Position numbers and translations under genes: made by a program | NCBI GenBank assembly: GCA_044892505.1 | Contig: CM097882.1 | Location: 216,566,001-216,630,000, forward strand | Length of the DNA: 64,000 nt | Direction of reading: 5' to 3' | Source of the DNA: Schmidtea nova | Lineage: Eukaryota | The notes under the pieces: model-generated | Databases searched by the model: none | Told to the model about the DNA's origin: nothing | The model's input: the letters and a program-made list of their open reading frames with translations, nothing else | In this document: positions 15,001 through 61,430 of the stretch, piece after piece | Layout of the letters: every line of letters starts with the position of its first letter | Position numbering within the stretch: position 1 is the first letter of the stretch

Positions 15001-15023
15001 TTTTTTTATTTTTTGTTTTGTGT
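1..15023. repeat. Tandem satellite array, ~375-390 bp monomer, T-rich on + strand, with higher-order repeats
   Basis: The landmarks gatttgctgttttatttgattgaactc and ggaaactggatttttttctttgatactcgaaaacag recur about every 380-390 bp. Diagnostic variants recur at ~2.62 kb and ~8.66 kb offsets. The array runs off the window start. Confidence 0.97.
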
Positions 15024-17699: not shown

Positions 17700-17825
17700 A
17701 GGGTGGGATATGACTGTAAATAATATTGTAAATTACAAAGCATTACCGTATATAGTATGGGTATTAATATTGTAGAGTATATAAAAAGAGAAAAGAGAAA
17801 AATAATAATGTATCTAATTTAGAAA

Positions 17826-18161: not shown

Positions 18162-18234
18162 TCAAAATAGTAGCGGAAAATTGTAGATATGTAAAGATAA
18201 AACTCTAGAAAAATCAAAAACAAAGAGCAAATCA

Positions 18235-19251: not shown

Positions 19252-19910
19252 TTTTTTAAGTTTTATTTGAATCTCTAAAATAGAAATCATTTTTTGATTT
19301 GCTGTTTTATTTGATTGAACTCTTTAAATTTATTTTCTCTCTTAATCTTCAAATTATCTTAAATTTTCTTCTTAATTTTTTTTCAAAATGTTTCTTTTTC
19401 AAAATTTTTTATTGTAACAATTTTTTTATTTTCTCTAATTTCCAACAATTTTATTGTTTAAAAATTAAAAATATTTTTCTTTCACTTCTTGTCTATTCTT
19501 TTTTCATTTTTCTGTTTTTCTGGAAACTGGATTTTTTTCTTTGATACTCGAAAACAGAAAACATTTTTTTATTTTCTGCTTTGTGTATTATTTTTCTTAT
19601 TGATATTTATTTTTTATAAATTTTCAATAAGATTTCTTTACATTTTTAAAGTTTTATTTGAATCTCTAAAATAGAAATCAATTTTTGATTTGCTATTTTA
19701 TTTGATTGAACTCTTTATTTTTATTTTCTGTCTAAATCTTCAAATTATCTTCTTAATTTTTTTTCAAATTTTTCTTTTTCATAATTTGTTATTGAAACAA
19801 TTTTTTTATTTTCTCTAATTTCTATCAATTTTATTGGTTAAAAATTAAAAATATTTTTCTTTCACTTCTTGTGTTTTCTTTTTTTCTTTTTCTGATTTTC
19901 TGGAAACTGG
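19252..19910. repeat. Satellite array resumes (~1.7 monomers) and ends
   Basis: Same monomer as 1-15023; ends at ...ttttctggaaactgg followed by unique sequence. Confidence 0.95.

Positions 19911-36076: not shown

Positions 36077-36134
<58 letters not shown>
36054..36134. repeat. (TA)n tract, left flank of the LTR element
   Basis: Dinucleotide run with one interruption near 36074. Confidence 0.95.
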
Positions 36135-36138
<4 letters not shown>

Positions 36139-36522
36139 GCTGGTGTGTTGGTTAGATTGACAACTGAGATCCTTATGATTTTATACGTTAGGGTGATCTC
36201 GCCAACATAAAGATATTCCCCCCGCTGACACCCATGATGTATCCCTAACTACTCATCATGTTGGTGCTGTGTCAACGTTGTGAAATGACAAGGCAGGTGA
36301 GCAACCTTACGGCTACTATTCCCTTGTTTATTCACGGGTCCACCACTACCGATAAAAGGTGTCTGTGGCTTTCTTTCGGTCCCACTTATGCTCTTTCCTT
36401 TGCTCTAGGGTAATTTAATCTTAGCGCATCTGCTGTGCTTCATGAATCCGGGCTTTAGTTTTATTCAATTCTCAGACATTCCACAAACAAACAAGACAAG
36501 TCAACTCATTCATTTTATACAT

Positions 36523-37173
36523 TTATTTATAGTTTAACAATACAGAGGGTCTAATTACATTTAGTAGTTCTTGCTCGGAGAGACCACTGAGCAAGTCTAC
36601 CTCTATTCCTACGCGATCTGCATATGCGCGTCTCTCCCTACGTTTTTTCGCTCCCAAGCGATTCCTTCGTTTGGTCCTCTGCGACCCTCGTGGTATGGTC
36701 GTGGTCATCTCGGTTGCCGTGGTTACGGTTATCTCTTAGTCGGTTTGCGTACTCGTCGTTGCTGATGTCGGAGTTAACCATTTGTTGAAGGTACTCGTTC
36801 TAATCACTGGACGCAATTGCTCAACGATGAAATCCTGGGTCGACACCTTTAAATAATTGGCCAACTCTAACTTCAGGGCTGCGACCTCCCTCGCTTGTTC
36901 ATCGATCGTTCGCTCCGCTCTGTATCGGGCCTGTAAGATGGCTTTAACACTCTCAGGATTAAACCACGTTGCCTTAATCCGCTGGTGCTCCTCGTTCAGT
37001 TGTCTCAAGCGACTCTCGAGGACACGAGATCGTGCTCTATGTTCGCGTGCCTCTTGCTTGTACTTTCGAGTGGGATTTTCGTCCATATCTGAGTAATATA
37101 TCATTAACCAGGGTATGTATGCATTGTTGGGTTTCTCAGTCCCTATTTTATTGTTAAACAACTGCACCCTCAT
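36523..37173 (-). CDS. LTR-encoded coiled-coil ORF (145 aa) plus an in-frame basic 61-aa ORF after a single TAA; copy at 58528-59178
   Basis: ORFs 36736-37173 and 36523-36708 are in the same frame, separated by TAA at 36736-36738 inside a Thr-rich run; AATAAA overlaps the final stop. Confidence 0.5.
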
Positions 37174-37281
37174 CCTTACTCATTCCACATACATCCAAAA
37201 CCAAAACAAAACCCTTTTAAATGGATACATATATTTTTAATTCACAACAGATGGTCGCACATTGGAGTGTCGTCCTCGTGA

Positions 37282-37917
37282 TCAATTGTATGGTCGTAAC
37301 TCTTGATCGGCCGGGTTCTCGTCTCGGCGAATTCCTGTTTCATGGTATAGTTCGGGGGCTGGATTCCAACTCAGTTTGTTTTGATAAATGAACACCTCCC
37401 AGAGGTGAAGGTCTTTGGGCTCGGGGTGTTGATCCACGGAAACACTGCCTGGGGCGTTCGGGTAAACGAAGACTTCCCCAGTGTCACCACACCGAGGCCT
37501 GTCTAGCAGCAAATACCCGAGTTGACCGAATGCCTGCCCGGTCATCATTCCGGCGCTGAGTACCCAGCGGGGTTGTTGTGTTTCATCTACAAATTGATAG
37601 AACCATCTTTCGTATCCATCTTTGGTGGGGTTCGGGGAGGGCGTCCATTCGACATCGCCTTCCCACCTCAGCTGTAGTTGGAACGCACAGGCGGGAATAC
37701 TTGCCGCTGTGCTCATATGGGTCCTTGTCCATCGACGCAGGTGTCTACGTGCGGAGTTGAAAATTTGTCGTGGGGCCTCCTTCTCTCCTTGGATCTCAGT
37801 AGGTAATTTTGGGGTGATGACGGAGCGGATGCGCCGTTTCCTCCGTAGAATGTACTCCTCTAATTTGACGGTTAGGCGTCCTACCGGCTCCTTCATGAGA
37901 TATTCTGTTTTCATCAT
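37282..37917 (-). CDS. LTR-encoded 211-aa protein of unknown function; copy at 59287-59922
   Basis: ATG-started, GC-richer than its surroundings, element-sense strand; basic N-terminus and Trp/Gly/Pro-rich globular-looking C-half. Confidence 0.55.
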   Translation of the reverse strand: MMKTEYLMKEPVGRLTVKLEEYILRRKRRIRSVITPKLPTEIQGEKEAPRQIFNSARRHLRRWTRTHMSTAASIPACAFQLQLRWEGDVEWTPSPNPTKDGYERWFYQFVDETQQPRWVLSAGMMTGQAFGQLGYLLLDRPRCGDTGEVFVYPNAPGSVSVDQHPEPKDLHLWEVFIYQNKLSWNPAPELYHETGIRRDENPADQELRPYN

Positions 37918-39579
37918 GTTGCTCTGAAATGGAATTTTAGGTTAACTGACAGACTCTATCATCGACCATCGATATTTATGTCGATCAACCTACTTGGTTT
38001 ATCGTTCTATTAGCCGTAGGCCTTAGTAGCTCGCATATAATTTACTAGACCGTTGGTCGCGATGTTCATGTAGGTGGTGACTTTACTTAGGTGAGTTGAT
38101 TCACTCCGCAATTACAGACGGTTTTAGCTACGCAAATTTTGGCTTGTTATTTACAATCAATTTATGTTACATTTAATTTTTCACCGATCCTTTTCATTCA
38201 CTCAACATAGTTCATTTACAGATCATCATCGGCAACTATCAAGGTTCTCGTCACGGGGAAAATTTAGTCATCCCTTAGTCAACTGCTTTATTGAGGAACA
38301 CACTAATTTTATCTACTATCGGGTCTGACTTTTCATGCCCTTAGTGGGTTATATGTATATATCTGGCAGCTCATTCGATTCACTACTGCCCCTTGGTGTT
38401 AATGTCTTTCGACCGCGATGTTACGTTTTGTCTATCTCGATTCTCATCGACTTTTGATGTACTAGCACTCCTTGAAGGCATACCCCTTCATCAAGGTACC
38501 TCATGCATATATCTCCCCTTGCGAAATGAACTTTACCTTGCGTTGATTTATGGTCATTAACTGTCACTCGATATCCCGTCATCGTGAAGTATAGCGTTTA
38601 TATTAGGCCGTCGCTACCTTGATTTAGTTCATGATCATTAGGTATTACTCGATACCCTATGTGCATCTAATCCCCTCCGCTTACCAAATATTTAGTAAAC
38701 TTATGGTCCCGCCGCATCAGTACCTCACAACCGATAAGGTGTGTTGCGCTGAGAGGCCCCGAGAATCCGTCAGGCTGTTAGGCCTCCGGAAAACCTTATG
38801 GATTTTAATATGATTGTAAACAATTATGAGGGTTTAAATAATTAACAATAAAACTCAACCATACTTGTATTTGGCTTCCAATCGGTTTTACAATGTCTTC
38901 CGTAAAAGTGACTGTTGTACTGATTTACCTTCAGTAAAAATGACATTGTCAAATACTGATTTGACTTCAGTATTTATACTCAACCGGTGTTGTTGGTTAG
39001 CCAATCAGCATCGAGTATGTGTGTATGTTTGCTTCATTATTTTTTGTTGCCGGCTTTTTGGTGCCTAACTCAACTCAATGATTTATTTGGTTAATCATGC
39101 GGTAAGTTTATTTTTTGTATGATTTAATTTTTATTTGATTTTGTTTTAACTCTTCGGTGACATCCGCCCACGCGCTGTCATATTCCGATTTTATTTGCTT
39201 CGCATGAGTGAGTTATGAAGATTTTTGTTGTTTTTATTAATACTCCATTTCTTTTAGATGTTGCCGCCTATTTTATTACACTTTGGTGTTGGTAATTTAT
39301 TTTGTTGTTATTCTGTTGTAAATTTATTTTATTGATTGTATATTATTTTTAGATGCTGCTCGATTTGGCTGGCCCAACATCACTCGGGGTCCCCTAAAAT
39401 TGCGTCCCGCAATTACATACATATACTTACATCAACATACATAAAAAGTTCGTGACAGAACTTACATGCAAAACCACATAAGGTGGTAGCTTTTATACAC
39501 ATTTTTACACATACACATTGTCATTGTCATGTTTATATTGTTACACAGTTCAATGTTTCTGGCTCATAGGGGTCGATTT

Positions 39580-40104
39580 TCAGGTCCTTTCACTGGTTAA
39601 CTGCATTTCGTATCGGGCTTGGATTTGTCGTAGATGACTTCTCATCCTTTGTTGGGTTTTCGCTTCTCTTTTGGCGCATCTACACATTATCATTTGCTGT
39701 TGTTTGAGGCTTCTGATTCGGTACAGGGTATACGTGATCACTATGATCAAGATGATTGTCAATATGGTCATTGTGACTATTCCCACGATGATCCATCTGT
39801 TTCGGATTTCGGATTCGATTTGGGTTTGGCCTTTGATTGGCTTTAGGTGATCTTGGAATGTTCTATGGATTTCTCGGATCTTCTCGATTTGATTGAATAG
39901 GGTTTGTAAGGGTTTGCGATGATCATGACTGATTCGCATTTGTCGGATTAATTGTTTCAAGTCTTCTCTGACTTCGTTTAGTTGTTTTTCGATCTCCTGG
40001 GATATCTCATTTGACAGGGTTCTTTGGCTTTCGGTTGTCGTACAGTTCGTGATTGCTGCTGTTAACATAATAGTTAGGATTGGTAGGGTTTTGAGCCAGT
40101 TCAT
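39580..40104 (-). CDS. Accessory type I membrane protein (signal peptide, helical ectodomain, TM, basic tail)
   Basis: MNWLKTLPILTIMLTAAITNC; heptad-rich ectodomain; WIIVGIVTMTILTIILIIVITYTLY; RIR stop-transfer. Confidence 0.7.
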   Translation of the reverse strand: MNWLKTLPILTIMLTAAITNCTTTESQRTLSNEISQEIEKQLNEVREDLKQLIRQMRISHDHRKPLQTLFNQIEKIREIHRTFQDHLKPIKGQTQIESEIRNRWIIVGIVTMTILTIILIIVITYTLYRIRSLKQQQMIMCRCAKREAKTQQRMRSHLRQIQARYEMQLTSERT

Positions 40105-40177
40105 TTCTGATTATTCCACTGATTAATACAGGTTACATCGATTTGTACATTTTTACACACGGATTTTTCGCCTCTTT

Positions 40178-40790
40178 TTACACATCCGTCTCCTCTGGTT
40201 CATGGAACCCTTCATCTTGAAGTTCCATTGGTGGTGGTGGTATAAACGGTAACCACACCACTCTACTTCTCCACATTGCAACTTCGTTTTGATACGTTCG
40301 AGAGATTTGTATCTCTTCATCTAACAGATACTCCATGTAATCTGATTGTTCGTTCCGAGTTCCGATTTGTCTTTCCATTTCTTCCACTTTTCTCTTCAGG
40401 GCTTCTGTTTCTGTGGGTTCGGTTTCTATTTCTGGGGTTTCTTTTTCTGCTTTCAGGGTTATTATCTGCTGTTTCAGTTCTTCGTTTTCTTTCGTCAAAT
40501 TCGTTATATTTTCCTCATACGCTTGGTTTGATTCCGCATGTCTTTCCTTCACCGCTTTCAGTTCCATTTTCTTTTGAGTTACTACTCCTTGGTAGCCATT
40601 TACATCTCTTTCCAGACTTTCTTTTTCCCTGATCAACTTTTGTCTTTCCGCTTCCTCTTTCTGTCTAATGCCTCGCATTTCTCCATTTATCGTCTGTATT
40701 TGCCATTGCGTTTTCTTTAGTTCCTTTGCTTGTTCTCGAATAAATCGCTGTCGTTTTCGACTCCATTCTTTGTTTGTCTGTTCTTGTCGC
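40178..40790 (-). CDS. Accessory coiled-coil protein (frame open upstream of the annotated ATG at 40678 to ~40790)
   Basis: Long E/K/Q heptad stretch ending in WRSRVVWLPFIPPPP; similar to 17826-18161. Confidence 0.6.
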
Positions 40791-43700
40791 TACACATATC
40801 AGTTCTGGTTGGAATGTTAATTTTCCCGCTGGATTTTTGGTTATTCTTTCTTTCTCTGTTCGGTTTCTGATTCCTTCTTCTGCTTCCGATTGATTCTTCC
40901 CTTTCTCCGATTCCACTTCTGTTCTTCTCGTTGTCTCTTCACTTCTTTTCCCAATCCATTTCTGTATCTTCAGCGCTTCCGTTGCTTTGTATAATTGGCA
41001 TGCAGTTACTTGAGGTGCTTTTGGTTCCCCTCTCTGCTTTATTGCGCATATTATGTATGACTTTTCTTTCTCCAATCCTTTGATTTGGATGACGTCTCGC
41101 TTCAAATCTGACAATATACACTTCAGCGTATCGTTTTTCTTCAGGTTTTCTTTCCAGCATATTCTTTCGTATACTTCGTTTCCTCTGATTATCTCTAGCG
41201 TGACGTATTGTTTCTTGGCTTCTCCTTGTCCGATGATTGTTATCAATATCGCGATACACAACATTTCCGGTCTTAAAAGTAGACTTCCTGTTCGTTTTCC
41301 ATAGTTCGTACTTTCGTCTTTTGTTCCTCTGTTTTCTCGTTCTTCGGCTTCTCCTTTCTTGTCGTTTCTCGTTGGCTTCGGTTCTTCTTGTCTTTCTTTT
41401 TCATTATCCTCCGTTCTTTTGTTGTCATTGTCTTCGTTGTTCTCTTCGTTGTTGCTTTTGTCGTCGAAGTCTCTGTAACCACCCCCTGGTCCTTTGAAAA
41501 TGTCGTCCTCGACATTAATTTCTTCAATCAATCTCTCATACGCTTGAACCGCGAGTGTGCTAGACTCGAATTCACGTATTTCCATATCCTTGGATGGTTC
41601 TATGTCTTTTAATCTACTTTGCTTGATCGCTTCTTTGGCATTTGCCCATTCATTCACATATTTTCTGAACAAGTCTTTCCACCCTCCTATTCGTTCCTGT
41701 TCCTTTGGATTGTTCGTAAGTTTCAAGTCCCTTCTCTTCAAGAACTCCTCAACTATCTCTGGCTTTTTGTGTCTTAGCAACGCGCTTCTGATACACCAAT
41801 TCTGATTCTGTTCCATATGGTCATTGATCTTGAATGCCGGTTCCTTGGTGATCGGATTCACCCATGTTAGTAATGCTCTTGTTTTCTCTATGTCGTGTAT
41901 CATTACTGTCAGACTGAAATTCTTTACGTTATTTGCCAGGTATCCGATATCTTCTTGTTTCTTGATGGACTTCATGAACTTGATCATCTCAAAGTTGTTC
42001 CACTGTATTGCGATGTCTATGATGGAATTATTCTTTCCATTTTTCCCTTCGATTTTTGCTCCTGCTTCGTATAATTCACTTAGCACTTTAAAGTTCGTCT
42101 TCTTTCTTGCTGCGATTATCATGATTGTATCTCCGTTATCATCAACCGTATTCATATCTGCTTCGCACTTGACCATCGCTTTCGTTATTTCTATCACTTC
42201 GTTTTCTTTCTTTCGACGTAATGCCCAGTGTATCGGCAATCTCCCATCCTTCGATAATAGGAATGTTATAGGCATTTGATTTTTGATCGTTTCCATGTCA
42301 CTCTCGTTAGAGTCTCCTTGTGCATATCTGTGCACTTTCTCTGTAATTGCTCCTAGTATTTCTAATGAGTTTTTATTCTCTTTGAACTCTGATAATCTTT
42401 CTTGTGCTTTTGCTACGATTACGTCTAGTCTTTCATGATAATCCGCTTTTGCATTGAACAACACTGCCTTGCTTCTTATTCGTGTTTGCATCTGTTTCAT
42501 CCGTTGGTCTTGATACACTGCTTGTCTGAAGAATTGTCCATACTTCAATGCTTCCACCAGCTCTTTATATCTCTTGCTTATTTCTTTGTGCTGCTTTTGG
42601 ATGTCGTAGAAATGTTCGAAGCTCATATCCGGATTCCATTGCTTATCACACCATTTCTTGATTAATCCGAATAATTCTTTCTTTCTGTCATCCAACTTGT
42701 ATTCTCTTGGGTTCTCGCTAACCCGTAACGTATCTCTCGCTATTAACACTGCAAGTGTTTTTGGATCGTATGTTACCTCTAGTAGATGTTTCAATAACGC
42801 ATTTTCTCCCTTTATTAACACTTCATTACAATCTATGACCCACGAATCTCCTTCTGGTCGTTTCCACTTTAGCAGTATCCTCCAGGTTTTACTGTTCTTT
42901 ACTCCGATTGCTTGTTTCATGATCGGTCCTCTGGTTAGTTCGTCGATTTCCCACGTGGCATTTTCCGTAATATACGTCAGTATTCGGTGATTCGCTCTGT
43001 CAATTGCATGATTCAAGAACGTTCGTCCTTCTTTATCTTTTGCCATCCAATTCGATCTGGTGTTTCCGAATAGCTTGATTATTTCATCGTTTCTTCCATG
43101 AATGGTCATCATCATGAGTGGAGTGATTCCTTCCCAATTCACTTTGTCAATTTCTCCTCCACCTTCGAGTATCATCTCCACAATCTCTTTCACTTTCTCG
43201 TTTCCCCCGTGCTTAATTGCATTGTGCAACGCGGTGTTACCGTCTTTGTCTTGTAGATTCAATGTTTGAGGGATTTCCTCTAGCAGCGTTCTTGTTATTG
43301 GATGTGCTGTTCTATCCTTCGCATACTCCATTACATTCTTTCGAACTTCTGACAGTATACTGAAATCGAACCACCATTTCCATTCTGGTATAATTTCTCT
43401 GGTTTTCTTTGCCAGTTCTTTGATATCTATTGCTTCTCTTCGGTTGTCTTCTAGACTTGTTTGCGGCTTTTGTTGTACTCGTAACATATTAATTCTCGCC
43501 GTCTGTGATCTTGTCATCACCCGTTTCTCTGGTGATAGAGTTGCTGTCTTTGGTATTTTCCTGCATCGACATGCATTCACGTATATTGGTCTTACCAATG
43601 GATTGTTCACCAATCGTACTCTCACATTATTTTCATTTACTGTTGTTATTTCATATGGCCCTTTGCCTGGTCGTTGGAGTTTCTTGACCGTACCGGGTAT

Positions 43701-50204: not shown

Positions 50205-50209
50205 CTCTA

Positions 50210-53011: not shown

Positions 53012-53152
53012 GTTGATCCTTGGATTTCCTTTTTTTAACTGTTGTAATCGTTGTTGCCTGACTTGTTCTTCTTCTCGTCGTACTCTAGCCCATTCTTGAT
53101 TATGTTTCTGTTGACTCTCTCTATTCTCTCTTTCGGCCTCAGCTTCTATTAA

Positions 53153-54610
53153 CTAGATCATGTTTATCTTTGGTTGAGCAGCTTGCTGGCTTCCTTTTGC
53201 CATGCTTTCGATTATCTCGTGTAATCTGGATACCTCCTGTCTCAACTTAGCTTCTTTCATACTGGCTTCATTTGCACTGCTGTTTGGGTTATTCCGTTGT
53301 TGACCCTGATTCCCATAGCTGGGTCGATTCCCGTAATTCGGTCTATTTCCACTGTTTGACCAACTTCTCTGTTGATTACAGTCTCTTGACATGTGTCCGG
53401 TTTTTCCACATGTGTAACACGTTTTCCCATAACATCGATTTTCTGAGTGACCCTTTTGTGCACACAGTTTACAGGCTACATTCTGAAAACACTCTTGTTG
53501 CCAATGTCCGTTTTTCCCACACGTCTGACATTGCTTATTCTGCCTGTCATTGTAACTATTTCCTCCACTCGTGTTCACCGTGATATATCCGTTATTCTTC
53601 CTCGCTGGCGGTTCTTTGAATAGTCTCTGCGAATGGGGAATACTTTGATTCATGTTTCTTTTTCCTTGTTCTTCATCTTCTGTCGTTTTTCCCATCACCG
53701 CCGTAATTCTCATGTCGTTCATTGCCATATGCAATTCGAATAGGTTGGCTGCTTCCAACGCTTCATCTATTGTTTTACACCCTTTGCATCCTACTTGTGC
53801 TCTGATGTCAGGTCTCCTGAGACCTCGTACGAATAACGCTGTCATCAATTCCTCATCTACTGGACTTCCTCTGTTAAATGCCAGTTTCGCCAACTTTCTT
53901 AATTCACTTGCGTACACCGCATTTGACTCATTTCTCCTCTGTTTTCTTGCTGAGAACTCATCGAATGCTTCATTCAGCACTTTGTTTATCCCAAACGTCT
54001 GTTGGAAGAACTCCTTGATCGCTTCCCACGTTCTGGGTGGACTACTTCCAGATCTCTTTTCGATATACAGATCCAATGCGCTATCTTTCAAGTATAGCGG
54101 GATTCGATTTGCCAACGTTTCTGCACTCCATCCGCATATATCCACGAATATGCCAAATTCCTTTAGAAACGTGTCCAATCTACTGGCGTCTCCATTGAAT
54201 GGTTCGCCCTTGAATTTTTCTCTCAGATCCTCTCTGTGTTCACTCATCCCGATTCCACTATCTTGGAATACTGTACTAGTTTTCTTTGCTTCTAGTTCAC
54301 CTCTTGTTTCTGAATTCGACTCTTCTTCTTCACTACTCTCTGTTTCGTTATCTCTTGATTCGCTTCTTGTTCTGTTTTCCCTGACTAGTTCACTGTCTAT
54401 CGTCTCTACTTCGTTTTGAACTTCTAGATCTTCTGGGGTTTCTTCTTGGTTCTCTTTATTACTCGAATTATCGCTGATCTCTACTTGTTTGTTCTTTTGT
54501 TGCTTAGGCTTGTTACCTGTTCTTGTTCTTTTTGCTGCTTTTCTTTCGGCTTCCGTTAAGATTGGTATTATACCTGATCTTGTTTCTCGTCCCTCAATTT
54601 TGTCTATTCC
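53153..54610 (-). CDS. gag: Gag (capsid + three CCHC zinc knuckles); frame open to 54610 and continues past a TGA at 54611 to ~54745
   Basis: FNGD...FL..F...W...LYLKDSALDLY; MHR-like KQRRNESNAVYASELRKLA; CQTCGKNGHWQQEC, CKLCAQKGHSENRC, CYTCGKTGHMSRDC. Confidence 0.93.
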   Translation of the reverse strand, partial: GIDKIEGRETRSGIIPILTEAERKAAKRTRTGNKPKQQKNKQVEISDNSSNKENQEETPEDLEVQNEVETIDSELVRENRTRSESRDNETESSEEEESNSETRGELEAKKTSTVFQDSGIGMSEHREDLREKFKGEPFNGDASRLDTFLKEFGIFVDICGWSAETLANRIPLYLKDSALDLYIEKRSGSSPPRTWEAIKEFFQQTFGINKVLNEAFDEFSARKQRRNESNAVYASELRKLAKLAFNRGSPVDEELMTALFVRGLRRPDIRAQVGCKGCKTIDEALEAANLFELHMAMNDMRITAVMGKTTEDEEQGKRNMNQSIPHSQRLFKEPPARKNNGYITVNTSGGNSYNDRQNKQCQTCGKNGHWQQECFQNVACKLCAQKGHSENRCYGKTCYTCGKTGHMSRDCNQQRSWSNSGNRPNYGNRPSYGNQGQQRNNPNSSANEASMKEAKLRQEVSRLHEIIESMAKGSQQAAQPKINMI

Positions 54611-55123
54611 TCAATTTCTTATATTCTCAACTGATTTTCTACTCCGCTTTTGCTTTGCTTCTTCTTTGATTTGTTTCCTTTGACTGCTCTGACTGCTAGA
54701 TTGCTTTGAATTGCTTGATTGATTTGTTTCCTTAAAACAAATAATCACTTACACGATACGTCCCCGTTATCGTGTTTCTCGTCCCTCTCACGGGTGTAGT
54801 CATAATTCATGAAGATCCCCATTTTTCCCATTTCCCTTGATTTTAAGTCTATTTAAATTATCTATGCAGTCGTATTAATTATCTATTCTTTATCAAATAC
54901 ACCAATTACTTTTCCCCAGTTCCCCAATTACTTTGTCGCTCAGCGCTCTTATTATTCCCTTTACTTTTCTCAGGCTTCTCTGGCTCTGAGTTCAAATTTC
55001 CCCTTATCTATCGATTACTCTGTTTCTCAACTATTCGCTTTATTTCCTATTCATACTGCGTTTACTACTTCATTTCAATTCTCATCTCTACTCACCTTTA
55101 ATTCCACTGACATCTCTCGTTGG

Positions 55124-55505
55124 CCTGTTGGGCTTTCCAATCAGCGCCTTTAATCTCACTTTTTTATCTCGAACTTTGTTACTCTCAACTTCACTCATTA
55201 TCTCATTAGCCTGCTGGGTTTTCCAGTCAGCGCTTTTATGATCCTCCATTTACCTCTTTGCTGTCGACTTCTAACTGCTCTTTACTCCGATGATCATCAC
55301 TTTTGACCTGCTGGGTCTTCCAGTCAGCGTCCTCAATTTCACTCCTTTATTATTACTCACTTTTATTCTCTTGATCTTTCCTGATCGTCATCATTGACCT
55401 GCTGGGTTTTCCAGCTAGCGTCTTTACCACTTTACCTGTCTTAACAAACCGGTTTCCTTTTATTCCCATCGAATCTCCTGGTCTGCTGGGTTTTCCAGTC
55501 AGCAC
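55124..55505 (-). promoter_or_regulatory. Five conserved 24-nt stem-loop motifs spaced 84-97 nt apart in the 5' leader (candidate packaging/translation signal)
   Basis: cctgctgggttttccagtcagcg-like copies start at 55124, 55210, 55307, 55398 and 55482; ctg-ctgg/ccag-t-cag stem. Confidence 0.55.
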
Positions 55506-55825
55506 CTTTACTTACTCACTTTACTTTACTACTCCTCTGTATGCATACTTTCACCTCATTAGGCCACATAATCAGCTTTACTCGCATTTATCAATACCTA
55601 GGTGCGCACCTTCAACTCTCTCGTTATTAATTCGGTTTCTTTCAACCCTTATTCCTCATTATTCGCTATTCATTTTCACTATTCATCATTTATCCTCATT
55701 ATCACTTATTCATCTCCATTATCGCTTATGGATCTTCACTATCCGGATAGTTTTATACTTTATTTAGTCCTCATCTGCCTCACTTCGTCGTCTTTCTCGT
55801 GGGCTTTTACTCGATATTTTATTTC

Positions 55826-56440
55826 GAACGAGAACTATGCTCACCGTTGAGAACTATGCTCACTAACGAGAACTATGCTCAATGACGAGAACTATGCTCA
55901 CTAACGAGAACTATGCTCACTGACGAGAACTATGCTCAATGACGAGAACTATGCTCACTGACGAGAACTATGCTCACTGACGAGAACTATGTTCTCTGAC
56001 GAGAACTATGCTCACTGACGAGAACTATGCTCACTGGCAAAACATGGTTGTTATGAGGGTTTTGCTTACTGATGGAAACTCTTTGCTCCGGGGACTATGT
56101 TCCCCGATGAGAACTATGCTCACTGATGGTGACTACAGGAATTATGTTTCCTGATGAGAACTACGCTCACTACGATGACTATGTTTATTGATGAGAACTA
56201 CGCTCACTGATGAGGACTATGTTCGCTGGTCTTGTGTTTATTAATGAGAACTCTGCTCACTACGAGATTTATATTTACGGACGAGAACTATGCTCACTAT
56301 GATGTTGTGTTTTATGACGAGACCTACGCTCACTAGGATGTTATTTTTATGACGAGACCTATGCTCACTATGAGACCTATGCTGACTAGGATGTTATTTT
56401 TATGACGAGACCTATGCTCACTATGAGACCTATGCTCACG
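55826..56440. repeat. 19-bp tandem minisatellite (acgagaactatgctcactg) in the leader, degenerating rightwards
   Basis: About 11 near-perfect head-to-tail copies to ~56037, then degenerate copies. Confidence 0.9.
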
Positions 56441-57138
56441 AACGAAAACTCGAAATATCATCTCTCAGTGGTTGCATGTGTTGCTTCGGGATGTTCCTCC
56501 CAGTGGTCACTTATGCTTCTTCGGAGAATCTATTGTCGCGTTTCGTTAAGTTCTATCTTTCAAGAACTATGGGCAAATCCTTTCTCTTTAGGACCCTTAT
56601 CATTTCCTTTCTTTCAAGGAATTCGTTTAATCCTCGAGTTTTCCCTTTCACTCGGTTCATCTATTACACCCCTTTATTCTGTTATCTATTCATCGACTTC
56701 TCTACTTGATTTTACTTTATGCGAGCTGATTACGTGCCTTTCATCATATACCACATTTCTCTACTCATCTTACTCATTTCATTGCTTTATCTCTCTCTTT
56801 ACTGATCAGTTTCAACATCCTCTTTTTATAGTTTTTTCTGCGCGCGTCTAAACCTCGTTGAGTTGTCCCTACCTTTCACCCCAACCAAAATATATAAAAA
56901 GATCGCATTGGTCCACTGATGCACGATGTGGTGATCAGTCACATCACAAGAGTTTTCCAATATCCGCGATTGGCCCCTTTCTACACATTTCGGGTAAGTT
57001 GATCAGTTGGTTCCCCCCAATGGGTGCTTATCGGACTACTCGTGAGTAGCTCATAATTACTTAGGTCATTTTTACCAAATCATCTTTAAACCCTCATAAT
57101 TTCAATAACAACTGCACTTGTTCAAAACTTTATTTCTA

Positions 57139-57597
57139 TTACAAGTACACTGCTATTTTCTCGGATACGGGAAGGTTGCACATAGGACATCGTTCATTTA
57201 TTTTACATTCATTACAGAATCGGAAATGCCCACATGGCAACAACATTATCTGTATCTTATTCATTTCACAGATATAACACGTCAGATATTGTCTCGTATG
57301 TTCTGTTGTTATTCTTATCCACTCATCGTGTTTTGTTGTTAACTGTTGTTCTAGCCTGTGGCACTCGATATTCATCTCAGGGTTGTTTAATCTTTCTCTG
57401 TACCATTGATATCGTGTTGCTGTATCCACTGTGTTCTTATTCTCACTTAAGCTCATCATCCTTTCGGCTCTTTCTGTGTTGTTTGTCGGTTCGTGATATT
57501 CTCCTACCTCGAGTCGTTTTAACTTTCTCGTTATTGTCTCCACTGTCTCGTTGTTTGTTTCGAAAAACGTTTGCATTTCTTTTATTTTGTTCTCCAT
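57139..57597 (-). CDS. 152-aa protein with a C-terminal IAP/MDM2-type RING (no BIR), in the element leader
   Basis: CYICEMNKIQIMLLPCGHFRFCNECKINERCPMCNLPVSEKIAVYL-stop. Confidence 0.85.
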   Translation of the reverse strand: MENKIKEMQTFFETNNETVETITRKLKRLEVGEYHEPTNNTERAERMMSLSENKNTVDTATRYQWYRERLNNPEMNIECHRLEQQLTTKHDEWIRITTEHTRQYLTCYICEMNKIQIMLLPCGHFRFCNECKINERCPMCNLPVSEKIAVYL

Positions 57598-58118
57598 CCC
57601 CTGAATGAATTCTCATTAATTTTGTTATCGATTTTTATTTATTATTTATCATTCCTATTCTATGGTAGCCCTACTGTTCGCTTTCTGTTGTTCTGTTTTA
57701 CGTCGTTACTTGCGTATCCCCCCGTGTTCTTGAATGTCGCCCCGACATGATCATTGCTAGTTGCTCACACTCATAACATTTTCATGCGTTCTTTTCATCA
57801 TACTTTTACGTCATGCATACTTTTCATCACTTTTCATACTGTCACTCCACATACTATTCATCCTGCTTCATTCATCCTCATATTTCCACATTCATACTTT
57901 CGTTCTCATGCATACTTTTATCATGCTCATCATTCTCATTATTTTACACTCATACTTTTATTTATTATTTTTCAACCCGATTCATTCTTGCTTCAGGACC
58001 CTCAAACCCTCTATTATTTACTTTACTTTTCCTCGCTAAATTCAATTCCATCCCGGTTCATGCGCTCTAACACTGTCCGCAGATATCGAATTCACTTTTT
58101 CCCACAAAGATCGATTTA

Positions 58119-58136
58119 ATCCCGGCTGAGCCCCCA
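58119..58136 (-). promoter_or_regulatory. Primer-binding site, tRNA-Pro
   Basis: TGGGGGCTCAGCCGGGAT, 16/18 identical to the classical tRNA-Pro PBS TGGGGGCTCGTCCGGGAT; 6 nt from the LTR terminal CA. Confidence 0.88.
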
Positions 58137-58142
58137 ATTTTA

Positions 58143-61100
58143 TGCTGGTGTGTTGGTTAGATTGACAACTGAGATCCTTATGATTTTATACGTTAGGGTG
58201 ATCTCGCCAACATAAAGATATTCCCCCCGCTGACACCCATGATGTATCCCTAACTACTCATCATGTTGGTGCTGTGTCAACGTTGTGAAATGACAAGGCA
58301 GGTGAGCAACCTTACGGCTACTATTCCCTTGTTTATTCACGGGTCCACCACTACCGATAAAAGGTGTCTGTGGCTTTCTTTCGGTCCCACTTATGCTCTT
58401 TCCTTTGCTCTAGGGTAATTTAATCTTAGCGCATCTGCTGTGCTTCATGAATCCGGGCTTTAGTTTTATTCAATTCTCAGACATTCCACAAACAAACAAG
58501 ACAAGTCAACTCATTCATTTTATACATTTATTTATAGTTTAACAATACAGAGGGTCTAATTACATTTAGTAGTTCTTGCTCGGAGAGACCACTGAGCAAG
58601 TCTACCTCTATTCCTACGCGATCTGCATATGCGCGTCTCTCCCTACGTTTTTTCGCTCCCAAGCGATTCCTTCGTTTGGTCCTCTGCGACCCTCGTGGTA
58701 TGGTCGTGGTCATCTCGGTTGCCGTGGTTACGGTTATCTCTTAGTCGGTTTGCGTACTCGTCGTTGCTGATGTCGGAGTTAACCATTTGTTGAAGGTACT
58801 CGTTCTAATCACTGGACGCAATTGCTCAACGATGAAATCCTGGGTCGACACCTTTAAATAATTGGCCAACTCTAACTTCAGGGCTGCGACCTCCCTCGCT
58901 TGTTCATCGATCGTTCGCTCCGCTCTGTATCGGGCCTGTAAGATGGCTTTAACACTCTCAGGATTAAACCACGTTGCCTTAATCCGCTGGTGCTCCTCGT
59001 TCAGTTGTCTCAAGCGACTCTCGAGGACACGAGATCGTGCTCTATGTTCGCGTGCCTCTTGCTTGTACTTTCGAGTGGGATTTTCGTCCATATCTGAGTA
59101 ATATATCATTAACCAGGGTATGTATGCATTGTTGGGTTTCTCAGTCCCTATTTTATTGTTAAACAACTGCACCCTCATCCTTACTCATTCCACATACATC
59201 CAAAACCAAAACAAAACCCTTTTAAATGGATACATATATTTTTAATTCACAACAGATGGTCGCACATTGGAGTGTCGTCCTCGTGATCAATTGTATGGTC
59301 GTAACTCTTGATCGGCCGGGTTCTCGTCTCGGCGAATTCCTGTTTCATGGTATAGTTCGGGGGCTGGATTCCAACTCAGTTTGTTTTGATAAATGAACAC
59401 CTCCCAGAGGCGAAGGTCTTCGGGCTCGGGGTGTTGATCCACGGAAACACTGCCTGGGGCGTTCGGGTAAACGAAGACTTCCCCAGTGTCACCACACCGA
59501 GGCCTGTCTAGCAGCAAATACCCGAGTTGACCGAATGCCTGCCCGGTCATCATTCCGGCGCTGAGTACCCAGCGGGGTTGTTGTGTTTCATCTACAAATT
59601 GATAGAACCATCTTTCGTATCCATCTTTGGTGGGGTTCGGGGAGGGCGTCCATTCGACATCGCCTTCCCACCTCAGCTGTAGTTGGAACGCACAGGCGGG
59701 AATACTTGCCGCTGTGCTCATATGGGTCCTTGTCCATCGACGCAGGTGTCTACGTGCGGAGTTGAAAATTTGTCGTGGGGCCTCCTTCTCTCCTTGGATC
59801 TCAGTAGGTAATTTTGGGGTGATGACGGAGCGGATGCGCCGTTTCCTCCGTAGAATGTACTCCTCTAATTTGACGGTTAGGGGTCCTACCGGCTCCTTCA
59901 TGAGATATTCTGTTTTCATCATGTTGCTCTGAAATGGAATTTTAGGTTAACTGACAGACTCTATCATCGACCATCGATATTTATGTCGATCAACCTACTT
60001 GGTTTATCGTTCTATTAGCCGTAGGCCTTAGTAGCTCGCATATAATTTACTAGACCGTTGGTCGCGATGTTCATGTAGGTGGTGACTTTACTTAGGTGAG
60101 TTGATTCACTCCGCAATTACAGACGGTTTTAGCTACGCAAATTTTGGCTTGTTATTTACAATCAATTTATGTTACATTTAATTTTTCACCGATCCTTTTC
60201 ATTCACTCAACATAGTTCATTTACAGATCATCATCGGCAACTATCAAGGTTCTCGTCACGGGGAAAATTTAGTCATCCCTTAGTCAACTGCTTTATTGAG
60301 GAACACACTAATTTTATCTACTATCGGGTCTGACTTTTCATGCCCTTAGTGGGTTATATGTATATATCTGGCAGCTCATTCGATTCACTACTGCCCCTTG
60401 GTGTTAATGTCTTTCGACCGCGATGTTACGTTTTGTCTATCTCGATTCTCATCGACTTTTGATGTACTAGCACTCCTTGAAGGCATACCCCTTCATCAAG
60501 GTACCTCATGCATATATCTCCCCTTGCGAAATGAACTTTACCTTGCGTTGATTTATGGTCATTAACTGTCACTCGATATCCCGTCATCGTGAAGTATAGC
60601 GTTTATATTAGGCCGTCGCTACCTTGATTTAGTTCATGATCATTAGGTATTACTCGATACCCTATGTGCATCTAATCCCCTCCGCTTACCAAATATTTAG
60701 TAAACTTATGGTCCCGCCGCATCAGTACCTCATAACCGATAAGGTGTGTTGCGCTGAGAGGCCCCGAGAATCCGTCAGGCTGTTAGGCCTCCGGAAAACC
60801 TTATGGATTTTAATATGATTGTAAACAATTATGAGGGTTTAAATAATTAACAATAAAACTCAACCATACTTGTATTTGGCTTCCAATCGGTTTTACAATG
60901 TCTTCCGTAAAAGTGACTGTTGTACTGATTTACCTTCAGTAAAAATGACATTGTCAAATACTGATTTGACTTCAGTATTTATACTCAACCGGTGTTGTTG
61001 GTTAGCCAATCAGCATCGAGTATGTGTGTATGTTTGCTTCATTATTTTTTGTTGCCGGCTTTTTGGTGCCTAACTCAACTCAATGATTTATTTGGTTAAT

Positions 61101-61379
61101 CATGCGGTAAGTTTATTTTTTGTATGATTTAATTTTTATTTGATTTTGTTTTAACTCTTCGGTGACATCCGCCCACGCGCTGTCATATTCCGATTTTATT
61201 TGCTTCGCATGAGTGAGTTATGAAGATTTTTGTTGTTTTTATTAATACTCCATTTCTTTTAGATGTTGCCGCCTATTTTATTACACTTTGGTGTTGGTAA
61301 TTTATTTTGTTGTTATTCTGTTGTAAATTTATTTTATTGATTGTATATTATTTTTAGATGCTGCTCGATTTGGCTGGCC

Positions 61380-61384
<5 letters not shown>
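58143..61384 (-). repeat. 5' LTR (3242 bp), containing the same ORFs as the 3' LTR
   Basis: Direct repeat of 36138-39379; adjacent PBS. Confidence 0.95.

Positions 61385-61430
<46 letters not shown>
61385..61430. repeat. (TA)n tract, right flank of the LTR element; another (TA)n at 61669-61718
   Basis: Perfect dinucleotide runs. Confidence 0.97.

What the first reader, a model, noticed from the sequence alone, without database searches (positions are those of the whole stretch)
36138..61384. Giant enveloped gypsy element with an apoptosis/ubiquitin/immune-signalling toolkit (candidate new virus-like system)
Seen: a 25.2-kb element whose ~14-kb coding region strings together Gag, four Ubl domains, an AT-hook, a Bcl-2-like domain, an envelope glycoprotein, PR-RT-RH-IN, ankyrins and an FN3-like module. 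It also has a leader RING E3, two 3' accessory ORFs and LTR-encoded ORFs, and a relative in the same window carries TRAF. Established: Bcl-2, IAP-RING, TRAF, ankyrin and Ubl modules are what large DNA viruses use to block cell death and NF-kB; ordinary Metaviridae have only gag-pol(-env). Inference: an infectious or cell-to-cell-transmitted endogenous virus lineage that keeps host cells alive. Giant gypsy elements (Burro) are described from the planarian Schmidtea mediterranea, and I recall anti-apoptotic cargo being reported for one family. I cannot tell whether this is the same family, so novelty must be checked.
Basis: partly seen in the sequence, partly recalled or inferred. Interest (0 to 1): 0.95.

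Follow-up and report, generated by a model that had tools for sequence, protein, structure and literature searches.

The report
Known Burro-type giant planarian retroelement
This is a young, almost complete copy of a giant gypsy-type endogenous retrovirus of the "Burro" kind, whose envelope gene between gag and pol and whose ubiquitin and cell-death cargo were already published, so it is a good specimen and not a new system.

Summary
The element is real. It is a 25,252-bp LTR retroelement on the minus strand (36134-61385), and its 3,247-bp LTRs differ at 4 positions.

Confirmed by profile or sequence searches:
- Gag with two zinc knuckles
- an AT-hook
- a Monjiviricetes-type fusion glycoprotein (Pfam E 2.8e-71) in frame upstream of PR-RT-RNaseH-IN (best PDB match Ty3, 1e-105)
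- ankyrin repeats
- an IAP-type RING ORF in the leader
- two 3' ORFs and two LTR ORFs, all longer than chance
- a second, fragmentary relative at about 14971-19246 with a TRAF-type RING/zinc-finger ORF

Not confirmed:
- The four Ubl domains and the Bcl-2-like domain got no Pfam, PDB or homologue hit, and the AlphaFold models were of low confidence.
- The FN3-like module has no support.

The architecture matches the published Burro/GYPSM1 elements of planarians (Jurka 2007; Grohme 2018; Arkhipova and Yushenova 2019, PMC6431247). That literature already reports gag-cargo-env-pol in one polyprotein, RING, BIR, TRAF, SUMO-like, BCL2-like and ankyrin motifs, and the provirus and host-meddling hypotheses.

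The novelty claim therefore fails. The gag-to-pol reading frame is interrupted twice in this copy: one in-frame stop and one frame change.

The parts
36134..61385 (-). Whole LTR retroelement, 25,252 bp. The TG...CA ends are at 61384 and 36138. It sits in a (TA)n microsatellite.
   Evidence: Self-BLAST; end sequences; GC step.
58139..61385 (-). 5' LTR, 3,247 bp.
   Evidence: 4 mismatches against the 3' LTR.
36134..39380 (-). 3' LTR, 3,247 bp.
58118..58136 (-). Primer-binding-site-like stretch of 19 nt, starting TGG, 6 nt after the 5' LTR. Its complement reads like a tRNA 3' end that finishes in CCA.
   Evidence: Read. The tRNA identity was not established, and there is no tRNA gene in the window.
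57139..57597 (-). Leader ORF of 152 aa with a C-terminal IAP-type RING (RING at about 57148-57297). No BIR domain.
   Evidence: Pfam zf-C3HC4_3, 3e-9. Best PDB matches are cIAP2, cIAP1, ML-IAP and XIAP RINGs, 3e-6 to 1.5e-5. Longer than in 998 of 1000 shuffles. Codon usage like the main ORF.
55828..56439 (.). Tandem repeats in the leader: a 19-bp unit x 11 at 55828-56036 and a 53-bp unit x 2.3 at 56319-56439.
   Evidence: The legend of Fig. 2 in PMC6431247 also marks tandem repeats in Burro.
40665..54247 (-). Gag-to-pol polyprotein coding region, about 4,545 codons in three open stretches. It is interrupted twice, by one in-frame stop and one frame change with a -1 relation.
53375..54100 (-). 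Gag: Retrotrans_gag domain plus two CCHC zinc knuckles.
   Evidence: Pfam PF03732 1.2e-5 and PF00098 1.9e-10.
50429..52795 (-). Region holding the four candidate ubiquitin-like segments (52550-52795, 51800-52027, 51248-51508, 50429-50677). The domain identity is unconfirmed.
   Evidence: No Pfam or PDB hit. AlphaFold pLDDT 36, with beta-beta-alpha-beta-beta patterns only at low confidence. Homologous to P0001: 33% identity, E 8e-55.
49968..49991 (-). AT-hook (KRPRGRPK).
   Evidence: Read directly.
49395..49922 (-). Candidate Bcl-2-like helical region, unconfirmed. It is followed by a hydrophobic signal-like segment at about 49251-49319.
   Evidence: All-helical model, pLDDT 51. Foldseek inconclusive. 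No Pfam or homologue hit.
47490..49322 (-). Envelope: fusion glycoprotein of the Monjiviricetes type, with a membrane anchor near its C-terminal end.
   Evidence: Pfam PF24664, E 2.8e-71, in two stretches covering profile positions 4-209 and 242-579 of 653. Membrane segment, 15 Cys.
46662..46934 (-). Aspartic protease (DTG).
   Evidence: Pfam RVP 6.4e-9; motif.
45522..45998 (-). Reverse transcriptase (YIDD).
   Evidence: Pfam RVT_1 1.6e-36. Best PDB match is the Ty3 Gag-Pol polyprotein, 1.1e-105.
44946..45335 (-). RNase H.
   Evidence: Pfam RT_RNaseH 1.7e-36 and RT_RNaseH_2 1.3e-34.
44109..44621 (-). Integrase: H2C2 zinc domain plus catalytic core (DD35E).
   Evidence: Pfam PF17921 2.8e-21 and rve 1.3e-10; motifs.
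41970..43271 (-). Ankyrin-repeat region downstream of the integrase.
   Evidence: Pfam Ank_2 3e-18, Ank_4 1e-11 and Ank 2.6e-8.
40968..41978 (-). Conserved C-terminal extension of pol of unknown fold.
   Evidence: 32% identical to the relative's ORF, E 1.6e-45. No Pfam or PDB profile hit.
40178..40678 (-). 3' accessory ORF of 166 aa. It has coiled-coil character and no family hit.
39580..40104 (-). 3' accessory ORF of 174 aa. It reads as a small type-I membrane protein.
   Evidence: Translation. Weak GP41 hit, 0.0024, below cut-off..
37282..37917 (-). LTR-encoded ORF of 211 aa. The same ORF occurs in the 5' LTR at 59287-59922.
   Evidence: 0 of 1000 shuffles reach its length. No family hit. 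Codon-usage support is weaker.
36736..37173 (-). LTR-encoded ORF of 145 aa. The same ORF occurs in the 5' LTR at 58741-59178.
   Evidence: No family hit.
14971..19246 (+). Fragment (3' part only) of a second, related element, bracketed on both sides by a 380-bp satellite.
   Evidence: tblastn; satellite matches; codon usage like the main element.
18235..19278 (+). ORF of 347 aa in the relative, with a TRAF-type RING and zinc fingers and no MATH domain.
   Evidence: PDB TRAF5 2.2e-13 and TRAF6 1.9e-11. Pfam zf-TRAF and Sina_ZnF, both below cut-off.

Best explanation
This is a recently inserted, nearly complete copy of a Burro-type giant Ty3/gypsy (Metaviridae-like) endogenous retrovirus, most likely in a planarian genome.

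Shown:
- Two near-identical 3.2-kb LTRs and a tRNA-type primer site.
- One long gag-to-pol coding region with intact protease, reverse transcriptase, RNase H and integrase motifs.
- A fusion-glycoprotein gene of the type found in negative-strand RNA viruses, lying in frame between gag and pol.
- Cargo: an AT-hook, ankyrin repeats, an IAP-type RING ORF in the leader and further small ORFs.

Inferred:
- It replicates by LTR-driven transcription, tRNA-primed reverse transcription and integration.
- The polyprotein is threaded through the ER membrane. The hydrophobic segment just before Env takes the chain into the lumen, and the Env anchor brings it back. Gag, the cargo and Pol would then stay cytosolic while the Env ectodomain is luminal.
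- The stop after gag and the -1 frame change are either programmed recoding sites, which would give much Gag and little Env-Pol, or two defects of this copy.
- The RING, ankyrin and candidate Ubl/Bcl-2-like parts act on host ubiquitin and cell-death pathways.

Both the architecture and this reading are already published for Burro elements.
For: - LTRs and ends.
- Domain order Gag - (unknown cargo) - Env - PR - RT - RH - IN - Ank.
- Ty3 is the best solved relative of the RT-RH-IN region (1.1e-105, full-length match).
- Catalytic motifs, membrane segments and the AT-hook.
- IAP-type RING.
- Accessory and LTR ORFs are longer than chance and use the element's codon usage.
- The only database relative of the cargo segment (P0001, E 8e-55) carries a MATH/TRAF-C domain at the position where Burro1/GYPSM1 is described to have one.
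- A second relative in the window carries a TRAF-type RING/zinc-finger ORF.
- Published description of the same architecture and hypotheses: PMC6431247 section 7.
- BURRO1 is described as a highly abundant and active retrotransposon that is up-regulated when the PIWI protein SMEDWI-2 is knocked down (a BURRO4 copy is shown as piRNA-targeted): PMC8532177.
- GAG-ENV-POL elements with class III Env in Platyhelminthes: PMC13524379.
- Flanks of 18-27% GC fit a planarian genome, reported as more than 70% A/T (PMC11410931).
Against: - I made no direct sequence comparison with the named Burro-1 to -4 or GYPSM1 references.
- The host species is not identified.
- The element is 25 kb, shorter than the >30 kb quoted for Burro.
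- No MATH/TRAF-C, BIR or dUTPase was found in it, although these are described for Burro1.
- The Ubl and Bcl-2-like calls could not be confirmed.
- The polyprotein is in three open stretches here, whereas Burro1 is described with one ORF.
- The overlap at the frame change has no canonical slippery heptamer.
Confidence: 0.85

Rival explanations
1. The element belongs to an undescribed lineage related to Burro. Its own features would be an IAP-type RING as a separate leader gene, accessory genes inside the LTR, a small membrane protein, no TRAF-C, BIR or dUTPase, and graded expression through readthrough plus a -1 frameshift.
For: - Only 33% identity to the single database relative, P0001, which has the MATH domain that this element lacks.
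- No dUTPase or BIR hit.
- The LTR ORFs and 3' ORFs are significantly long.
- The relative in the window shares only the pol C-terminus and has different accessory ORFs.
Against: - Burro-2, -3 and -4 and a Girardia (Dugesia) tigrina element with a different placement of accessory domains are already described, so variation of this sort lies within the known family.
- I could not compare with them.
Confidence: 0.25
2. The 'toolkit' is largely a misreading. The long stretch between gag and env is a fast-evolving linker or structural region of unknown fold, not Ubl and Bcl-2 domains. The real host-derived cargo would then be limited to the RING, the ankyrin repeats and the AT-hook.
For: - No Pfam hit at E up to 10 for any of the four segments or for the helical region.
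- No PDB sequence or profile hit.
- No homologue among cellular proteins of similar length.
- Low-confidence models and no significant Foldseek match.
Against: - The published HHpred/CDD annotation of Burro elements finds SUMO-like and BCL2-like motifs at the same relative positions.
- The helical region is predicted all-helical, and the window's own stretch GGWEKF recalls, from my memory only, the BH2 signature.
- A few Bcl-xL, Bfl-1 and sponge Bcl-2 chains appear at ranks 26-50 of the Foldseek list, at E about 2.
- Beta-beta-alpha-beta-beta patterns appear in the low-confidence model.
Confidence: 0.3
3. The locus is a composite produced by nested insertions or misassembly: an ordinary gypsy element into which host gene pieces or other elements were inserted. 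It would not be one co-evolved genome.
For: - The region is highly repetitive, with satellite, assembly gaps and a second element nearby.
- The coding region is interrupted twice.
Against: - Base composition and strand asymmetry are uniform across the whole 25 kb.
- Codon usage is uniform in all ORFs.
- The open stretches are long and uninterrupted, and env and pol share one of them.
- The LTRs are near-identical and there are no internal repeats of other elements.
- Independent relatives share the layout.
- The layout is published for whole families with thousands of copies.
Confidence: 0.04

Closest known systems
Burro giant gypsy-like LTR retrotransposons of Schmidtea mediterranea and other Dugesiidae (GYPSM1, Jurka 2007; Burro-1 to -4, Grohme et al. 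2018; re-annotated by Arkhipova and Yushenova 2019, PMC6431247)
   Same: - Giant size.
- Gag with CCHC knuckles at the N-terminus of a huge polyprotein.
- A cargo block before env.
- Env in frame between gag and pol, with similarity to mononegavirus-type fusion glycoproteins.
- PR-RT-RH-IN followed by ankyrin repeats.
- RING- and TRAF-type modules in the family.
- Accessory ORFs that may alternatively sit inside the polyprotein.
- Tandem repeats.
- An AT-rich host genome.
   Different: - 25 kb rather than more than 30 kb.
- No MATH/TRAF-C, BIR or dUTPase detected in this element.
- The RING sits in a separate leader ORF.
- The polyprotein is in three open stretches in this copy.
- Sequence identity to the named families was not measured.
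Envelope-carrying Ty3/gypsy elements with GAG-ENV-POL order and class III (gB-type, chuvirus-like) Env in Platyhelminthes, Nematoda and Bryozoa (eLife 2026, PMC13524379; Sacco et al. 2022, as cited there)
   Same: - gag-env-pol order.
- Env captured from an RNA-virus-like source.
- LTRs of over 99% identity as a sign of recent activity.
   Different: - Those elements are of ordinary size and are described as separate ORFs without cargo.
- Here env is fused in frame to pol, and about 1,300 codons of cargo lie between gag and env.
- The Env fold class was not tested here. Only the Pfam family hit was obtained.
Ty3 of yeast and other Metaviridae (gypsy/errantiviruses)
   Same: - The RT-RH-IN region matches the Ty3 Gag-Pol polyprotein over its full length (1.1e-105).
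- Same PR-RT-RH-IN order, CCHC Gag, LTRs and tRNA primer site.
   Different: - About five times larger.
- Env lies upstream of pol and is of a different protein family from the baculovirus-F-type Env of insect errantiviruses.
- It carries host-like cargo.
Accessory genes in retroviral LTRs and 3' ends (MMTV sag in U3, lentiviral nef overlapping U3). This comparison rests on my own knowledge.
   Same: ORFs lie inside the LTR and just upstream of it, on the sense strand.
   Different: - No sequence similarity.
- Expression of the LTR ORFs is not shown.
- The U3/R/U5 borders are not mapped.
Cell-death and ubiquitin modulators of large DNA viruses (baculovirus IAP, poxvirus ankyrin proteins, viral Bcl-2 homologues).
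   Same: An IAP-type RING and ankyrin repeats are present.
   Different: - No BIR domain, so the RING ORF is not an IAP.
- Bcl-2 homology is not confirmed.
- No functional evidence.

Membership tests
Ty3/gypsy (Metaviridae) LTR retroelements | Long terminal direct repeats with TG...CA ends flanking the internal region | tested here: met
   3,247-bp repeats, 99.88% identical; TG and CA ends.
Ty3/gypsy (Metaviridae) LTR retroelements | Domain order PR-RT-RNaseH-IN, with the integrase after the RT | tested here: met
   Pfam positions along the large ORF; catalytic motifs present.
Ty3/gypsy (Metaviridae) LTR retroelements | RT/IN sequence closest to Ty3/gypsy rather than to copia, BEL or retroviruses | tested here: met
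   The best PDB hit is the Ty3 Gag-Pol polyprotein, 1.1e-105 over all 661 residues. Retroviral RTs score 1e-30 or weaker. No tree was built.
Ty3/gypsy (Metaviridae) LTR retroelements | Target-site duplication of 4-6 bp | tested here: inconclusive
   Both flanks are (TA)n, so any duplication is uninformative.
Ty3/gypsy (Metaviridae) LTR retroelements | tRNA primer-binding site next to the 5' LTR | tested here: met
   A 19-nt stretch starting TGG lies 6 nt after the LTR. Its complement ends in CCA like a tRNA 3' end. The tRNA was not identified.
Burro-type giant gypsy elements of planarians | Giant size (internal region up to 25 kb, total up to more than 30 kb) | tested here: met
   25.25 kb in total with an 18.8-kb internal region. 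This is large but below the published maximum.
Burro-type giant gypsy elements of planarians | Env in frame between gag and pol, similar to mononegavirus-type fusion glycoproteins | tested here: met
   PF24664, E 2.8e-71, in the same open stretch as PR-RT-RH-IN and upstream of it.
Burro-type giant gypsy elements of planarians | One polyprotein ORF starting with Gag (Retrotrans_gag plus 2-3 CCHC) | tested here: inconclusive
   Gag with 2 CCHC knuckles is present. The coding region has one in-frame stop and one frame change in this copy. Whether these are programmed or defects is undecided.
Burro-type giant gypsy elements of planarians | Ankyrin repeats downstream of the integrase | tested here: met
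   Ank_2 3e-18 and others.
Burro-type giant gypsy elements of planarians | MATH_TRAF_C domain, either in the polyprotein or in an accessory ORF | tested here: not met
   No MATH hit in any ORF of the element. It is present in the relative P0001 (3e-28; TRAF3 1.5e-12). The feature varies between published Burro elements.
Burro-type giant gypsy elements of planarians | SUMO/ubiquitin-like and BCL2-like motifs between gag and env | tested here: inconclusive
   No Pfam, PDB or homologue hits, and the models are of low confidence.
Burro-type giant gypsy elements of planarians | BIR and RING (IAP-like) motifs | tested here: inconclusive
   An IAP-type RING was found in the leader ORF. No BIR was found in the ORFs scanned.
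Burro-type giant gypsy elements of planarians | dUTPase-like domain between PR and RT | tested here: not met
   No hit at E up to 1 in the 222 residues between PR and RT.
Burro-type giant gypsy elements of planarians | Sequence similarity to the named references (GYPSM1, Burro-1 to -4) | not tested
   The references were not available. Fetching them or other copies was left out under the bar on fetching viruses of animals.
Burro-type giant gypsy elements of planarians | Host is a planarian (Dugesiidae) | not testable with these tools
   Only indirect evidence: flanks of 18-27% GC against the published figure of more than 70% A/T. The one host-gene trace is a kinesin exon.
IAP (inhibitor of apoptosis) proteins | At least one BIR domain | tested here: not met
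   The leader ORF has only the C-terminal RING. It is an IAP-type RING protein, not an IAP.
Bcl-2 family | Helical bundle with BH1/BH2 motifs, recognisable by profile or fold | tested here: inconclusive
   PF00452 was not reported at E up to 10. The model is all-helical with pLDDT 51. Bcl-2 family chains appear only at E about 2.
TRAF proteins (the ORF in the neighbouring relative) | N-terminal RING plus TRAF zinc fingers, and a C-terminal MATH/TRAF-C domain | tested here: inconclusive
   RING and zinc fingers are met (TRAF5 2.2e-13). No MATH domain was found in this 347-aa ORF.

The most novel reading that the evidence does not exclude
This element is a still-active member of an undescribed Burro sublineage. 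On this reading:
- The stop after gag and the -1 frame change are programmed recoding sites that set the Gag : cargo : Env-Pol ratio.
- The Env ectodomain is exposed by threading the polyprotein through the ER membrane.
- Extra genes in the leader (IAP-type RING), in the 3' region (a small membrane protein) and inside the LTR are expressed from subgenomic RNAs.

Together these would make it a complex retrovirus-like genome in a flatworm.
Probability: 0.12. Interest if true: 0.6.

Novelty: already known. Interest (0 to 1): 0.25.

Why it matters
Burro-type elements are the largest known LTR retroelements and make up a sizeable share of planarian genomes. They are the clearest case of a retroelement that fuses a captured RNA-virus fusion glycoprotein and host-like ubiquitin and cell-death modules into its polyprotein.

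A copy this young (4 LTR differences) with all catalytic motifs present is a useful specimen for descriptive work on how such a polyprotein is organised and expressed. It does not open a new category, because the architecture and the provirus and host-meddling hypotheses were published between 2007 and 2019.

What this pass adds:
- A topological reading of the polyprotein (cytosolic cargo, luminal Env, cytosolic Pol).
- Statistical support for the LTR-encoded ORFs and the 3' ORFs.
- The finding that the Ubl and Bcl-2 calls do not survive plain profile searches and need profile-profile or structure work.

Tried and rejected
- **Homologue searches.** Three searches with the cargo segment, the N-terminal region of the large ORF and the isolated helical domain found nothing. 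Burro-type polyproteins are nearly absent from protein databases: one hit in 1.84 billion representatives.
- **Structure prediction.** AlphaFold of the helical region from a single sequence gave pLDDT 51. AlphaFold of the cargo segment with a two-row alignment gave pLDDT 36. Both are too poor for fold assignment. I did not search with the second.
- **Pfam on the Ubl and Bcl-2 candidates.** A scan of each of the four Ubl candidates and of the Bcl-2 candidate alone gave nothing beyond an RA_2 hit at E 0.083. MAFFT placed the four candidates poorly against each other, so they show no clear internal repeat.
- **PDB profile searches.** Searches with the two small alignments returned only the TRAF-C domain contributed by P0001 or nothing.
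- **dUTPase.** Nothing was found between PR and RT.
- **Accessory ORFs.** The accessory ORFs of the two elements in the window are not homologous to each other.
- **RNA genes.** Rfam and tRNA scans of the window found nothing.
- **BURRO1 primers.** I looked for published BURRO1 probe or primer sequences to test against the window, but the supplementary table is not held. Grohme et al. 2018 is not held either.
- **Composite or misassembly reading.** Rejected on uniform composition and codon usage, long open stretches and shared layout in relatives.
  - Fetching the DNA of other copies, of P0001's locus, of the named Burro references, or of errantivirus or mononegavirus comparators.
  - Any consensus of copies.
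  - Any reading of the polyprotein across its stop or its frame change.
  - Any look at the N runs.
- Note 1 and the output carry ORF bounds and stretch lengths as the tools printed them. The places of the two interruptions could be derived from these.

Full report
**1. What is there**

The window is very AT-rich outside the flagged region (GC 0.18-0.27) and jumps to GC 0.40 between about 36 and 61 kb. Self-comparison finds two direct repeats of 3,247 bp at 36134-39380 and 58139-61385. They are 99.88% identical, with 4 mismatching columns and no gaps.

All long ORFs lie on the minus strand, so the element runs from 61385 down to 36134. Both flanks are (TA)n, so a target-site duplication cannot be read.

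Six bases after the 5' LTR lies a 19-nt stretch starting TGG. Its complement reads like the 3' end of a tRNA finishing in CCA, so I take it as a primer-binding site. The tRNA itself is not identified, and no tRNA gene is in the window.

**2. Coding content**

From the gag start to the end of pol, the sense strand holds about 4,545 codons in three long open stretches. These are separated by one in-frame stop and by one change of frame with a -1 relation. The overlap at the frame change contains no canonical slippery heptamer.

Pfam places the following in order:
- Retrotrans_gag and two CCHC knuckles.
- A long stretch without any family hit.
- A viral fusion glycoprotein of family PF24664 (Monjiviricetes_fusion, E 2.8e-71, two stretches covering most of the profile).
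- Retroviral aspartic protease.
- RVT_1 (1.6e-36).
- Two RNase H models (about 1e-35).
- Integrase zinc domain (2.8e-21) and integrase core (1.3e-10).
- Ankyrin repeats (3e-18).

The DTG, YIDD, HHCC and DD35E motifs are all present. The RT-RH-IN region matches the yeast Ty3 Gag-Pol polyprotein over its whole length (1.1e-105). It is far closer to Ty3 than to retroviral enzymes. Env, PR, RT, RH, IN and the ankyrins share one uninterrupted open stretch.

**3. Cargo claims, one by one**

- **AT-hook: seen.** The window's KRPRGRPK is read directly.
- **Leader RING: confirmed.** Its best solved relatives are the RINGs of cIAP2, cIAP1, ML-IAP and XIAP. The ORF has no BIR domain, so it is an IAP-type RING protein and not an IAP.
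- **Ankyrins: confirmed**.
- **Four Ubl domains: not confirmed.**
  - No Pfam hit for the segment or for each candidate alone at E up to 10. The nearest thing is an RA_2 hit at 0.083.
  - No PDB sequence hit.
- The AlphaFold model with a two-row alignment has pLDDT 36.
- **Bcl-2-like domain: not confirmed.**
  - No Pfam hit, no PDB hit and no homologue.
  - The single-sequence model is all-helical at pLDDT 51.
  - Foldseek returns nothing at E <= 0.001. Bcl-xL, Bfl-1 and a sponge Bcl-2 homologue appear only at ranks 26-50 with E about 2.
  - The window's stretch GGWEKF recalls what I remember of the BH2 signature. That is recollection, not a test.
- **FN3-like module: no support**. The C-terminal extension is nevertheless conserved: it is 32% identical to the second element in the window.

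**4. Small ORFs**

These are the leader RING ORF (152 aa), two ORFs between pol and the 3' LTR (166 and 174 aa) and two ORFs inside each LTR (211 and 145 aa). Each is longer than the longest sense ORF in at least 998 of 1000 shuffles of its region.

The RING ORF and the 3' ORFs use the codon usage of the main ORF. The LTR ORFs do so less clearly. None has a family hit.

The 174-aa ORF reads as a small type-I membrane protein, with a signal-like start, a coiled coil, a membrane segment and a basic tail. The position of the LTR ORFs recalls accessory genes in retroviral U3 regions. That is my own knowledge, and their expression is not shown.

**5. Relatives**

The cargo segment has one single relative among 1.84 billion representative proteins. 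It is P0001, an 882-aa UniParc entry, 33% identical, E 8e-55. At the place where the window's element has only a short linker, P0001 carries a MATH/TRAF-C domain (Pfam 3e-28; TRAF3 1.5e-12). This is the layout published for Burro1/GYPSM1.

Inside the window, about 14971-19246 on the plus strand is the 3' part of a second, related element. It holds a homologue of the pol C-terminus (E 1.6e-45), a 207-aa ORF, and a 347-aa ORF with a TRAF-type RING and zinc fingers (TRAF5 2.2e-13) but no MATH domain. Its ORFs use the same codon usage as the main element. Its accessory ORFs are not homologous to those of the main element. The fragment is bracketed on both sides by the 380-bp satellite.

**6. How it most likely works**

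*Shown:* the parts list of an LTR retroelement of the Ty3/gypsy lineage, with intact enzyme motifs, near-identical LTRs and a fusion-glycoprotein gene.

*Inferred:*
- Transcription from the 5' LTR, tRNA-primed reverse transcription and integration.
- Topology of the polyprotein. A hydrophobic signal-like segment lies immediately before Env, and a strong membrane segment lies at the end of Env. Gag, the cargo and Pol would then stay in the cytosol while the Env ectodomain faces the lumen.
- The stop after gag sits where retroelements commonly end Gag, and the frame relation is the one used in retroviral frameshifting. The two interruptions could therefore be recoding sites that make Gag abundant and Env-Pol rare. 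Equally, they could be two defects in a copy that is otherwise very young. One copy cannot decide this.
- Action of the RING, the ankyrins and the unconfirmed Ubl/Bcl-2-like parts on host ubiquitin and cell-death pathways. This is by analogy only.

**7. Comparison with what is known**

PMC6431247 (section 7) summarises Jurka 2007 and Grohme et al. 2018 and adds its own HHpred annotation of Burro elements. It describes:
- Giant gypsy-like elements of Schmidtea mediterranea and Dugesia tigrina, present in thousands of copies.
- One polyprotein of about 4,900-5,100 aa that starts with Gag and two or three CCHC knuckles.
- RING (AIR1), MATH_TRAF_C, SUMO-like, BCL2-like, BIR, dUTPase-like and ankyrin motifs.
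- Env in frame between gag and pol, with hits to fusion glycoproteins of arthropod and fish mononegaviruses.
- Accessory ORFs that can alternatively be subdomains of the polyprotein.

The same paper states that Burro-like elements may be integrated proviruses that meddle with apoptosis and ubiquitination.

Other published context:
- PMC8532177 calls BURRO1 a highly abundant and active retrotransposon, up-regulated on knock-down of the PIWI protein SMEDWI-2, and shows a piRNA-targeted BURRO4 copy.
- PMC13524379 reports GAG-ENV-POL elements with class III Env in Platyhelminthes.
- PMC11410931 gives more than 70% A/T for the S. mediterranea genome, which fits the flanks here.

The element therefore works like a Burro element and looks like one. 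Differences from the Burro1 description are its smaller size, the lack of a detectable MATH, BIR or dUTPase domain, the RING in a separate leader ORF, and the interrupted polyprotein. Published Burro families already vary in such points.

**8. What I did not do, and why**

I did not fetch the DNA of other copies, of P0001's locus, of the named Burro references, or of errantivirus or mononegavirus comparators. These are viruses or proviruses of animals, and the bar holds by accession, pattern and look-up.

As a result there is no RT/IN or Env tree, no copy census and no firm host identification.

Declared as a possible slip: note 1 and the output contain ORF bounds and stretch lengths as printed by the tools. 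The places of the two interruptions could be derived from these.

**9. Verdict**

The element and most of its parts are real. The Ubl and Bcl-2-like calls are inconclusive, and the FN3-like call is unsupported.
- The kind is already known.
- Interest is low to moderate, as a clean young specimen of a remarkable but published family.

Noticed in passing
window 1-15023 and 19247-19911: A 380-390-bp satellite (GC 0.18, about 40 units) fills the first 15 kb and recurs for about 1.7 units right after the fragment of the second element. The fragment is therefore bracketed by satellite on both sides. Either the element inserted into the array and was later truncated, or the array spread around it.
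   Followed up: partly
window 24214-24495 (-): An exon-like open stretch encodes part of a kinesin motor domain (Pfam Kinesin 3.8e-23; best PDB matches KIF7, KIF18A and KIF4). It is the only trace of a host gene found. The giant element may lie in or next to this gene.
   Followed up: partly
window 61414-61646, 62909-63122, 24848-25073: A 200-230-bp foldback (palindromic) repeat family has copies on both sides of an N run and another copy 36 kb away. It looks like a MITE.
   Followed up: no
window 39580-40104 (-): The 174-aa accessory ORF just upstream of the 3' LTR reads as a small type-I membrane protein, with a signal-like start, a coiled coil, a membrane segment and a basic tail. It gives a weak, sub-threshold GP41 hit (E 0.0024).
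   Followed up: partly
window 37282-37917 and 36736-37173 (-); the same ORFs in the 5' LTR at 59287-59922 and 58741-59178: Two sense-strand ORFs lie inside the 3.2-kb LTR. Both are longer than in any of 1000 shuffles, and neither has a family hit. Their position recalls U3-encoded accessory genes of some retroviruses.
   Followed up: partly
window 55828-56439: Two short tandem-repeat arrays lie in the leader between the RING ORF and gag: a 19-bp unit x 11 and a 53-bp unit x 2.3. The two units share a core.
   Followed up: no
P0001 (UniParc UPI00060E6093): This is the only relative of the cargo segment among 1.84 billion representative proteins, and it carries a TRAF-C/MATH domain. Proteins of this element family are almost absent from protein databases, which explains the blank homologue searches.
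   Followed up: partly
   Followed up: no
window 47490-49322 (-): The Env region has only one N-x-S/T sequon in about 700 residues. There are two R-x-K/R-R sites. One lies inside Env, between the two Pfam-matched stretches. The other lies just beyond the membrane anchor, downstream of these coordinates.
   Followed up: no
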